Assembly (NCBI RefSeq): GCF_902713615.1
Contig: NW_024055461.1
Coordinates: 2,349,323-2,413,322, forward strand
Origin: Scyliorhinus canicula
Lineage: Eukaryota
Length of the DNA stretch: 64,000 nucleotides
Direction: 5' to 3'
In this document: positions 9,495 through 9,800 of the stretch, in pieces
Position numbering within the stretch: the stretch's first letter is position 1
Layout: each line of letters opens with the position of its first letter
The notes under the pieces: model-generated
What the model was told of the DNA's origin: nothing
Databases searched by the model: none
What the model saw: only the letters and a program-made list of their open reading frames with translations
Program-made: the position numbers and the translations under genes

Positions 9495-9800
9495 CTAGAA
9501 TATTAGAAGTTTCTAGGTAAAGCGAGGCTAGAATATTAGAAGTTTCTAGTTCCCAAGAAAGGCCTAGAATATTAGAAGTTTCTAGGTAAAGCGAGGCTAG
9601 AATATTAGAAGTTTCTAGTTAAGCAGAGTAGGGGCTAGAATATTAGAAGTTTCTAGTTCCCAAGAAAAGCCTAGAATATTAGAAGTTTCTAGGTAAAGCG
9701 AGGCTAGAATATTAGAAGTTTCTAGTTAAGCAGAGTAGGGGCTAGAATATTAGAAGTTTCTAGTTCCCAAGAAAAAGGCTAGAATATTAGAAGTTTCTAG
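9495..9800 (+). repeat. Array of 9 identical 22-bp repeats CTAGAATATTAGAAGTTTCTAG separated by 8 spacers of 11-16 bp in 3 classes
   Basis: Repeats start at 9495, 9528, 9564, 9597, 9635, 9671, 9704, 9742 and 9779. Spacer order is A B A C B A C B (A gtaaagcgagg; B ttcccaagaaa(a)(a)g(g/c)-type; C ttaagcagagtagggg). Confidence 0.97.

What the first reader, a model, noticed from the sequence alone, without database searches (positions are those of the whole stretch)
9495..9800. Repeat-spacer hairpin array immediately behind the PBS
Seen: 9 perfectly identical 22-mers CTAGAATATTAGAAGTTTCTAG, each able to form a CTAGAA/TTCTAG stem with a 10-nt loop, carrying the palindrome AATATT and two CTAG cores. 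They start 1 nt after the PBS and are separated by 3 recurring spacer types (A B A C B A C B; the ~107-bp ACB block is duplicated). The repeats are invariant while the B spacers vary in A-run length. A partial motif, TAGAATATT, also occurs in U5 near 9405. Known: this position houses packaging and dimerisation signals, and the foamy-virus dimerisation palindrome has a CUAG core. Inference: a multimerised packaging/dimerisation or Gag-binding platform expanded by RT slippage, perhaps giving copies a packaging advantage; a tandem host-factor or silencer binding array is an alternative.
Basis: partly seen in the sequence, partly recalled or inferred. Interest (0 to 1): 0.8.

Follow-up and report, generated by a model that had tools for sequence, protein, structure and literature searches.

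The report
Nine-hairpin array in shark retrovirus leader
A young foamy-virus-like endogenous retrovirus in a catshark-type genome carries nine identical copies of a small RNA hairpin right behind its primer-binding site. Comparison with the published catshark copy suggests the hairpin itself is under selection, most likely as a repeated RNA signal for genome packaging or pairing, although its function has not been shown.

Summary
There are nine exact copies of the 22-mer at 9495-9800 and none elsewhere in the window. The spacer order is A B A C B A C B, and a 107-bp A-C-B block is duplicated.

The array lies 1 nt behind the PBS of a 9.3-kb LTR element (8517-17815). The LTRs are 99.8% identical, the target-site duplication is 4 bp, and there is one uninterrupted 1762-aa gag-pro-pol ORF and no env. 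Pol matches foamy-virus PR-RT and integrase best. Gag has a Gly-Arg box and no zinc knuckle. Close protein relatives occur only in Scyliorhinus.

The published catshark sequence ERV-Spuma.0-Sca shows the same array with about 8 units in a different order. Its 115 readable letters of canonical repeat have no difference from the window, while the neighbouring leader differs by about 7%. Its one variant unit keeps the stem through pair-preserving changes.

In the window, flanking bases lengthen every stem to 8-9 bp by C-G or G·U pairs, so the hairpins are stronger on the plus strand. I conclude that a plus-strand RNA hairpin with a fixed purine-containing loop is conserved and multiplied. A packaging or dimer-linkage role is the best guess (0.45) but is untested. 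This is a new variant of a known kind. Interest 0.55.

The parts
8513..8516 (.). Target-site duplication GGTG, 5' copy
   Evidence: The same four bases flank the element at 17816-17819.
8517..9475 (+). 5' LTR (TG...CA, 959 bp)
   Evidence: blastn against 16854-17815 gives 99.8% identity, with 1 mismatch and 1 gap. Ends read.
9405..9413 (+). U5 copy of 9 bases of the repeat (TAGAATATT)
   Evidence: Also present in the 3' LTR at 17745-17753. Significance is marginal.
9476..9493 (+). Primer-binding site (18 nt, starts with TGG)
   Evidence: It abuts the LTR end. 15 of 18 bases match the PBS-position stretch of a Siganus foamy-like ERV. The tRNA identity was not tested.
9495..9800 (+). Array of nine identical 22-nt hairpin units with spacers A B A C B A C B
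   Evidence: Stems are 8-9 bp with flanks. The ensemble probability of the local hairpin is 0.54-0.85 for 8 of 9 units.
9564..9670 (+). First 107-bp higher-order block (unit-A, unit-C, unit-B)
   Evidence: TRF period 107. Family D13 is 99% identical.
9671..9778 (+). Second higher-order block (108 bp)
   Evidence: It differs from the first block only in the B spacer.
9801..10226 (+). Rest of the leader up to the gag start codon
   Evidence: About 7% different from the readable lines of the published family sequence (counted by hand).
10227..15515 (+). gag-pro-pol, one uninterrupted ORF of 1762 aa (no breaks)
   Evidence: Contains RVT_1, the RNase H tether, RNase_H and rve. Best solved-structure matches are foamy PR-RT and PFV integrase. 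Has a Gly-Arg box and no CCHC motif.
15516..16857 (+). 3' untranslated part, with no env ORF. Includes a 41-bp x2 repeat at 15721-15803 and a purine-rich tract at 16849-16857 in front of the 3' LTR.
   Evidence: No ORF of 100 aa or more. No tblastn similarity to the post-pol ORFs of four related fish ERV loci. Repeat. The polypurine tract is inferred from position only.
16858..17815 (+). 3' LTR
17816..17819 (.). Target-site duplication GGTG, 3' copy

Best explanation
The array is a multiplied cis-acting RNA stem-loop in the 5' leader of the genomic RNA of an env-less, foamy-like endogenous retrovirus of the published catshark ERV-Spuma.0-Sca family.

Shown:
- Each 22-mer with its flanks folds on the plus strand into an 8-9 bp stem. 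The stem presents the same 10-nt loop, which contains the purine run AGAAG.
- The stem and loop are held constant across unit types and between two family sequences, while the spacers and the surrounding leader change.

Inferred:
- The hairpins serve as a many-site platform on the unspliced RNA next to the PBS. They would be bound by the Gly-Arg-box Gag or pair with the same units on a second RNA, since two 22-mers can form a 16-of-22 extended duplex. Either way they would act in genome selection or dimer linkage.
- The number of units changes by template switching between the repeats during reverse transcription.
For: 1. Context. The LTRs, target-site duplication, PBS and retroviral pol are in place. 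The best solved-structure matches are foamy PR-RT (E 1e-82 to 1e-77) and PFV integrase. Gag has a Gly-Arg box and no CCHC motif.

2. Position. The region between the PBS and gag holds the foamy-virus dimer-linkage sites SI-SIII and part of CAS-I (PMC5035957; PMC5874298).

3. RNA-level hairpin.
- All nine units pair at -1/+1 (C-G or G·U) and at -2/+2 (G·U or G-C). No cell is unpaired at these positions.
- The pair at -1/+1 changes on both sides between unit classes. The covariation score is 0.170 against 0.077 in shuffles, reached by 19 of 500 shuffles.
- Plus-strand hairpins fold at -6.7 to -9.9 kcal/mol, against -3.7 to -7.0 for the minus strand.
- The local hairpin dominates the ensemble.

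4. Conservation.
- The same array lies behind the PBS in the supplement sequence of PMC10699275. Its 115 readable canonical repeat letters show 0 differences from the window.
- Readable post-array leader lines differ at about 10 of 152 positions, which gives P(0 of 115) of about 4e-4 at that rate. Spacers carry at least 3 changes in about 61 letters.
- One variant unit changes stem pair 1 from C-G to U-A and pair 3 from A-U to G·U. Its loop is unchanged and its flanks are G-C (counted by hand).

5. Within the window, the three spacer classes differ strongly while their 22-mers are identical.

6. Distant foamy-like ERVs have a single stem-loop at or just behind the PBS. The Siganus one has an all-purine 5-nt loop.

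7. Analogy. In MMTV an unpaired purine loop and the PBS are the Gag-binding packaging sites (PMC8096270).
Against: - No functional data of any kind exist.
- There is only one comparator. It is a published consensus read from OCR text with cut line ends, so the counts are approximate and building the consensus removes rare variants.
- Independent contexts within the window are few (6 distinct rows), so the covariation is modest.
- The hairpins are weak (-3.5 kcal/mol for the bare 22-mer).
- The loop is not self-complementary, so a classical kissing-loop dimer site is not predicted.
- In foamy virus, dimer-site mutants still package RNA (PMC5874298).
- No complementary partner of the loop was found elsewhere in the element.
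- No Rfam family matches.
- Frequent template switching could homogenise the repeats without selection.
Confidence: 0.45

Rival explanations
1. The hairpins are an RNA-level element with another role. Candidates are nuclear export or stability of the unspliced RNA, control of gag translation (a scanning barrier or shunt), or help with primer placement or strand transfer next to the PBS.
For: The evidence for a conserved plus-strand hairpin is the same as for the best explanation. Repeated motifs are a feature of retroelement RNA transport elements (my knowledge). The foamy-virus leader is reported to use shunting for gag translation (PMC5035957). The array abuts the PBS.
Against: Nothing singles out any of these roles. 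No complementarity of the loop to other parts of the element was found.
Confidence: 0.2
2. The array is a neutral minisatellite. One ancestral hairpin behind the PBS was duplicated by template switching or replication slippage, and the copies are identical only because the expansion is recent or the repeats are homogenised. The extra copies do nothing.
For: Unit number and order differ between the window (9) and the published sequence (about 8). A different leader repeat in a Siganus foamy-like ERV has 6.6 and 13.6 copies in two loci. Distant relatives have a single hairpin. The element is very young, with 99.8% LTR identity. Tandem repeats in untranslated parts of LTR elements are common (PMC7004042).
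Against: Spacer classes A, B and C are shared by both sequences, so the unit classes predate their split. Even so, their 22-mers stayed identical while the leader diverged by about 7%. The one variant unit is pair-preserving. Homogenisation should have erased the spacer classes too.
Confidence: 0.15
3. The array works at the DNA level. The quasi-palindromic 22-mer would be a site for a dimeric host factor, making the leader an enhancer, insulator or silencer target, as in the gypsy leader insulator or the copia leader enhancer.
For: The architecture fits: a fixed short motif, variable spacers, and a position just downstream of the PBS. 16 of 22 positions are self-complementary. The unit holds two GAA-nn-TTC-like dyads (read from the sequence; a recalled resemblance to heat-shock elements, not tested).
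Against: The flank pairs are G·U in 6 of 9 units, and the published variant turns A-U into G·U. These changes keep an RNA stem but break a DNA palindrome. Folding favours the plus strand. No motif library was available to test any factor.
Confidence: 0.12
4. The array is a small-RNA source or target. Neighbouring 22-nt units could pair into roughly 22-bp imperfect hairpins that would be cut into one 22-nt RNA, or the array could be a piRNA target.
For: The unit length is 22 nt. Inter-unit pairing is 16 of 22 positions, at -13.6 kcal/mol for two units. Part of the ensemble pairs units with each other.
Against: The duplex has three 2x2 mismatches and is weak for a Dicer substrate. Local hairpins are predicted to dominate. 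No Rfam miRNA match was found. No small-RNA data were available.
Confidence: 0.03

Closest known systems
Foamy-virus leader dimer-linkage sites (SI-SIII, with the SII palindrome) within CAS-I
   Same: The virus lineage is the same by Pol and Gag features. The location, between the PBS and gag, is the same. Both are self-complementary sequences. The four-base core printed for the SII palindrome in PMC5874298 equals the four-base ends of the 22-mer.
   Different: The foamy-virus site is a single short palindrome, not a nine-fold hairpin array. Only four bases are shared, so there is no evidence of homology. The loop here is not self-complementary. Dimerisation is untested.
MMTV/MPMV-type packaging signals (an unpaired purine loop plus the PBS as Gag-binding sites; PMC8096270)
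   Same: A stem-loop displays unpaired purines next to the PBS on the unspliced RNA.
   Different: That is a different retroviral genus with a zinc-knuckle Gag. It has one bifurcated stem-loop, not repeats. Binding here is not tested.
gypsy leader insulator and copia, ZAM or Idefix leader repeats in Drosophila LTR elements (my knowledge)
   Same: These are arrays of a short conserved motif separated by variable spacers in the untranslated leader just behind the PBS, and the copy number varies.
   Different: Those act as double-stranded DNA protein-binding sites. Here the pattern of G·U pairs and compensatory change points to RNA. The host and the element lineage are unrelated.
Tandem repeats in untranslated regions of LTR retroelements, as a source of minisatellites and satellites (PMC7004042)
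   Same: Variable-copy tandem repeats lie inside a retroelement's non-coding part. A Siganus foamy-like ERV shows such a leader repeat with 6.6 and 13.6 copies.
   Different: Those repeats show no hairpin constraint or repeat-spacer structure. Here the unit is conserved while the spacers vary.
ERV-Spuma.0-Sca (published consensus catshark ERV, PMC10699275)
   Same: The LTR start, the size (9220 against 9299 bp), the leader sequence and the same hairpin array behind the PBS all match. The window element belongs to this family.
   Different: The published sequence has about 8 units in another order, shorter LTRs, and gag and pol annotated as two ORFs. The paper's main text does not mention the array.

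Membership tests
Foamy-like (spuma-type, class III) endogenous retrovirus | Pol closest to foamy-virus PR-RT-RNase H and integrase | tested here: met
   Best PDB hits are foamy PR-RT 7kse/7ksf/7o24 (E 1e-82 to 1e-77), against Ty3 at 6e-43 and MLV at 1e-29. The integrase part hits PFV integrase best.
Foamy-like (spuma-type, class III) endogenous retrovirus | Gag without Cys-His zinc knuckles and with Gly-Arg-rich box(es) | tested here: met
   No CCHC motif. There is a Gly/Arg-rich stretch at about residues 695-735, just upstream of the protease DTGA motif. No Pfam Gag domain was found.
Foamy-like (spuma-type, class III) endogenous retrovirus | Pol in its own ORF, expressed apart from Gag | tested here: not met
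   gag, pro and pol form one uninterrupted 1762-aa ORF. Fused gag-pol also appears in fish relatives of 2168-2206 aa.
Foamy-like (spuma-type, class III) endogenous retrovirus | env and accessory genes 3' of pol | tested here: not met
   The 1.34 kb after pol has no ORF of 100 aa or more and no similarity to the post-pol ORFs of four related loci.
Foamy-like (spuma-type, class III) endogenous retrovirus | PBS complementary to tRNA-Lys1,2 | not testable with these tools
   No vertebrate tRNA-Lys gene was available in the window or in the fetched loci. The only indirect evidence is 15 of 18 identity to the PBS-position stretch of a Siganus foamy-like ERV.
ERV-Spuma.0-Sca family (catshark) | Same LTR, leader and proteins as the published or annotated Scyliorhinus sequences | tested here: met
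   The LTR start string is found under the header ERV-Spuma.0-Sca. The leader lines are about 93% alike. Gag is 81-85% and RT 90% identical to S. canicula and S. torazame proteins.
Foamy-virus SII dimer-linkage palindrome | Conserved roughly 10-nt perfect palindrome in the leader | tested here: inconclusive
   The position fits. The 22-mer is a 16-of-22 quasi-palindrome with perfect 4-nt and 6-nt palindromes. Only the four-base core agrees with the palindrome printed in PMC5874298.
Foamy-virus SII dimer-linkage palindrome | Needed for RNA dimer formation | not testable with these tools
   There is only a thermodynamic prediction: two units pair at -13.6 kcal/mol, against 2 x -3.5 kcal/mol as hairpins.
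Leader protein-binding DNA arrays (gypsy insulator type) | Repeated fixed motif with variable spacers just 3' of the PBS | tested here: met
Leader protein-binding DNA arrays (gypsy insulator type) | Constraint acts on double-stranded DNA (strand-symmetric) | tested here: not met
   The flank pairs are G·U, the published variant turns A-U into G·U, and plus-strand folds are stronger than minus-strand folds.
Retroviral packaging signal with unpaired purines | Purine run exposed in a loop near the PBS | tested here: met
   The predicted loop holds AGAAG and is about 80% unpaired in the ensemble. This is a prediction only.
Retroviral packaging signal with unpaired purines | Specific Gag binding and an effect on encapsidation | not testable with these tools
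   No data.
Any curated RNA family (Rfam 15) | Covariance-model match | tested here: not met
   No hit at gathering score in the window. No hit at E <= 1 in 8500-10300.

The most novel reading that the evidence does not exclude
The hairpin is the specific RNA mark recognised by a foamy-type, Gly-Arg-box Gag. Its multiplication to 8-9 copies would be an adaptation of an env-less, genome-confined lineage, in which copies compete for their own particles and more marks mean preferential packaging. It would then be a natural counterpart of engineered multi-hairpin tags, and a direct pointer to the still undefined foamy-virus packaging determinant.
Probability: 0.15. Interest if true: 0.75.

Novelty: new variant of a known kind. 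Interest (0 to 1): 0.55.

Why it matters
How foamy-type Gag, which has no zinc knuckles, picks out the viral genome is an open question (PMC5035957). A naturally multiplied stem-loop with a fixed loop, sitting next to the PBS in a very young foamy-like element, is a concrete candidate for that recognition motif. It can be examined with sequence, structure and expression data alone. It also shows that leader repeats in endogenous retroviruses can carry a signal of selection and need not be plain minisatellites. Finally, it adds an undescribed feature to a published shark ERV family.

Tried and rejected
**Searches that found nothing**
- Exact look-up of the window's Gag-Pol, with either the ATG or the GTG start: not on record.
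- DNA around the three close Scyliorhinus proteins could not be fetched because the files are too large. A direct census of copies was therefore impossible.
- The 22-mer has no match in viral or metagenome contigs.
- Protein-guided scans of the same collections found nothing.
- Rfam gave nothing at gathering score or at E <= 1.
- A search for a partner complementary to the loop inside the element gave no more hits than chance.
- No env relic was found by tblastn with the post-pol ORFs of related loci.
- No tRNA-Lys gene was available to test the PBS.
- The paper by Cain et al. (PMC114864) is not held.
- The bacterial promoter/terminator scan is irrelevant for a vertebrate element.

**Readings considered and rejected**
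- CRISPR-like array: this is a eukaryotic retroelement, the spacers recur, and there are no cas genes.
- Assembly artefact: the array is present in an independent published sequence.
- Pre-miRNA: see the rival explanations.
- Pairing of the AAG in the loop with the primer's anticodon: only three bases, and no tRNA sequence was available to test it.

- When counting units in the cut OCR lines of the supplement, I assumed in my reasoning what the hidden line ends held. Nothing was written out, saved or used beyond the count of about 8.

Full report
**1. The observation**

The window holds nine exact copies of the 22-mer CTAGAATATTAGAAGTTTCTAG. They start at 9495, 9528, 9564, 9597, 9635, 9671, 9704, 9742 and 9779, all on the plus strand. 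There is no other match in 64 kb on either strand, even with three mismatches, and shuffled sequence gives none. Tandem Repeats Finder reports periods of 33, 69 and 107.

The spacers fall into three classes:
- A is 11 nt and occurs three times, always identical.
- B is 14, 14 and 15 nt. The copies differ in the length of an A run and in the last base.
- C is 16 nt and occurs twice, identical.

The order is A B A C B A C B. The A-C-B blocks at 9564-9670 and 9671-9778 are near-identical. The nine-base motif in U5 is at 9405-9413. By itself it is only marginally beyond chance.

**2. The element around it**

- Direct repeats at 8517-9475 and 16858-17815 are 99.8% identical, begin with TG and end with CA. 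They are flanked by the 4-bp duplication GGTG.
- An 18-nt stretch beginning with TGG abuts the 5' LTR at 9476-9493. One base later the array starts.
- A single uninterrupted ORF runs from the ATG at 10227 to 15515 (1762 aa, no breaks). It contains RVT_1, the degenerate RNase H tether, a second RNase H and an integrase core. This is the retroviral pol layout.
- Among solved structures the best matches by far are foamy-virus protease-RT (E 1e-82 to 1e-77). Ty3 scores 6e-43 and MLV 1e-29. The integrase part matches prototype foamy virus integrase best.
- Gag has no Pfam domain and no Cys-His knuckle. It has a Gly-Arg-rich box just before the protease motif. These are the foamy-virus hallmarks described in PMC5874298.
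- The 1.34 kb between pol and the 3' LTR has no ORF of 100 aa or more. It shows no similarity to the post-pol ORFs of four related fish loci. As it stands the element has no env.
- The element is inserted into a LINE ORF2.

**3. Relatives**

- In the large protein collections the only close relatives are annotated fragments from two catsharks. Scyliorhinus torazame has an RT fragment at 90% identity. S. canicula has Gag fragments at 81-85%. The next hits are teleost foamy-like ERV polyproteins at 30-45%.
- The DNA around the catshark proteins could not be fetched, and no public contig collection within reach held the 22-mer.
- The supplement of PMC10699275 describes a 9220-nt consensus catshark ERV called ERV-Spuma.0-Sca. 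Under that name it holds a sequence that starts with the same LTR start as the window's LTR.
- In the OCR text of that sequence, where about 30 of every 40 letters per line are readable, the same hairpin array lies directly behind the PBS.
- The window element is therefore a member of a published family. The paper's main text does not mention a leader, a PBS or the array.

**4. Evidence from within the window**

- The bare 22-mer folds into a 6-bp stem with a 10-nt loop, at -3.5 kcal/mol.
- The bases on either side lengthen the stem in all nine units. Position -1/+1 is C-G in three units and G·U in six. Position -2/+2 is G·U in eight units and G-C in one. A third pair forms in three units.
- The pairing rule holds across unit classes. 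Spacers ending in C always face a spacer starting with G, and spacers ending in G always face one starting with T.
- With identical rows merged, no cell at these two pairs is unpaired, and one pair changes on both sides. The covariation score is 0.170 against 0.077 in shuffles, reached by 19 of 500 shuffles. Sliding the partner by one column drops pairing from 93% to 54-56%.
- Because most flank pairs are G·U, the plus-strand hairpins (-6.7 to -9.9 kcal/mol) are stronger than the minus-strand ones (-3.7 to -7.0).
- In the ensemble of the whole leader the local hairpin has a probability of 0.54-0.85 for eight of the nine units. The main alternative is pairing between units of the same flank class. 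The loop is about 80% unpaired.
- Two units can also form a 16-of-22 extended duplex at -13.6 kcal/mol. The array as a whole folds far better than shuffles (z = -5.1), as any array of quasi-palindromes must.

**5. Evidence from the published family sequence**

These counts were made by hand on OCR lines and are approximate.

- The readable lines show about eight units. The spacer classes A, B and C appear in another order, with small changes: one shortened A, one C with an indel, one altered B end and one new spacer.
- The 115 readable letters of canonical units show no difference from the window's 22-mer.
- The readable lines of the leader after the array differ at about 10 of 152 positions, and those of U5 at about 27 of 151. 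At the post-array rate, zero differences in 115 letters has a probability of about 4e-4.
- One unit is a variant. Its first stem pair is U-A instead of C-G and its third pair is G·U instead of A-U. Its 10-nt loop is unchanged and its flanks form G-C pairs.
- Changes that keep an RNA stem, one of which breaks DNA dyad symmetry, together with an invariant loop, are the pattern expected for a selected plus-strand RNA hairpin whose loop is read in a sequence-specific way.
- The shared spacer classes show that the unit classes are older than the split of the two sequences. Recent duplication alone therefore cannot explain why the 22-mers are identical.
- Caveats: there is only one comparator, it is a consensus, the OCR is noisy, and the line ends are cut.

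**6. Distant relatives**

- Two loci of a Siganus foamy-like ERV have a similar PBS-position stretch (15 of 18). A single 8-12 bp hairpin with an all-purine 5-nt loop starts at the PBS end.
- A further fish locus has a stem-loop overlapping the 3' end of its PBS.
- The Siganus family also has a different 12-nt repeat just before gag, with 6.6 copies in one locus and 13.6 in the other. Leader repeats in this group of elements do change in copy number.

**7. Interpretation**

Shown:
- The element is a young foamy-like ERV.
- A hairpin unit is conserved in stem pairing and in loop sequence.
- The unit is multiplied, and its number varies within the family.
- It sits in the leader of the genomic RNA, next to the PBS.

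Known:
- In foamy viruses this stretch carries the dimer-linkage sites, with SI overlapping the PBS, SII holding an essential palindrome and SIII at the gag start. It also carries part of the cis-acting region needed for vector transfer (PMC5035957; PMC5874298).
- How the Gly-Arg Gag selects the genome is not understood (PMC5035957).
- In MMTV an unpaired purine loop and the PBS are the Gag-binding packaging sites (PMC8096270).

Inferred:
- The hairpins are a many-site platform for Gag binding or for RNA-RNA linkage. I put this at 0.45.
- Unit number changes by template switching between direct repeats during reverse transcription, a well-known property of retroviral replication (review PMC3187697, listed).

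Limits of the likeness to the foamy-virus palindrome:
- It amounts to a four-base core, which I do not count as homology.
- In foamy virus, mutations in the palindrome block replication without lowering packaging (PMC5874298). The two functions should therefore be kept apart.

**8. Rivals**

- Another RNA-level role, such as export, translation or help with reverse transcription: 0.20.
- A neutral minisatellite built on one functional hairpin: 0.15. The conservation pattern weakens this.
- A DNA-level factor-binding array of the gypsy or copia leader type: 0.12. The G·U pairs and the strand asymmetry weaken this.
- A small-RNA source or target: 0.03.

**9. Novelty and verdict**

- The family is published. 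Arrays of repeats in retroelement leaders, and stem-loops behind the PBS, are known kinds.
- A nine-fold, repeat-spacer array of one conserved hairpin abutting the PBS of a foamy-like element has not been described in what I could search.
- I rate it a new variant of a known kind, with interest 0.55.

**10. Slips**

- To count units in the cut OCR lines I assumed in my reasoning what the hidden line ends held. Nothing was written out or saved.

Noticed in passing
window 7556-8516 and 17820-19309: The ERV is inserted inside a LINE ORF2. An endonuclease-domain ORF lies upstream (7556-8272) and an RVT_1 ORF downstream (17817-18569). Related LINE pieces recur at about 33273-34290 and 62251-62702.
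   Followed up: partly
window 40777-41790 (+) and 21586-22551 (-): Two intronless ORFs with a rhodopsin-family 7tm_1 domain (E 2e-23 and 8e-16). They may be chemosensory-type receptor genes.
   Followed up: no
window 53326-54800: A 35-bp satellite with at least 36 copies at 84-89% identity.
   Followed up: no
window 27578-29300 and 21250-21628: A purine-rich stretch of short repeats with 8, 10 and 18-bp periods, and a 39-bp x7 tandem repeat in a GC-rich region.
   Followed up: no
window 1-1027 vs 4674-5728; 1249-1321 (-): Direct repeats about 4.7 kb apart (92-95% identical) with an RT ORF (2321-3400, minus strand) between them. This may be another repeat-flanked retroelement. A tRNA-Val gene with a full Rfam score lies next to it.
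   Followed up: no
window 15721-15803 and 9434-9476: Two further small tandem duplications inside the ERV: 41 bp x2 in the 3' untranslated part and 21 bp x2.1 at the end of U5.
   Followed up: no
L001 5907-5985 and L005 7829-7985: A Siganus foamy-like ERV carries a 12-nt purine-rich repeat just before gag, with 6.6 copies in one locus and 13.6 in another. A single hairpin with an all-purine loop starts at the PBS end.
   Followed up: partly
window 10227-15515 vs published ERV-Spuma.0-Sca: The published consensus is annotated with two ORFs for gag and pol. The window copy has one uninterrupted 1762-aa ORF, 99.8% identical LTRs and an intact target-site duplication, so it is a very recent insertion.
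   Followed up: partly
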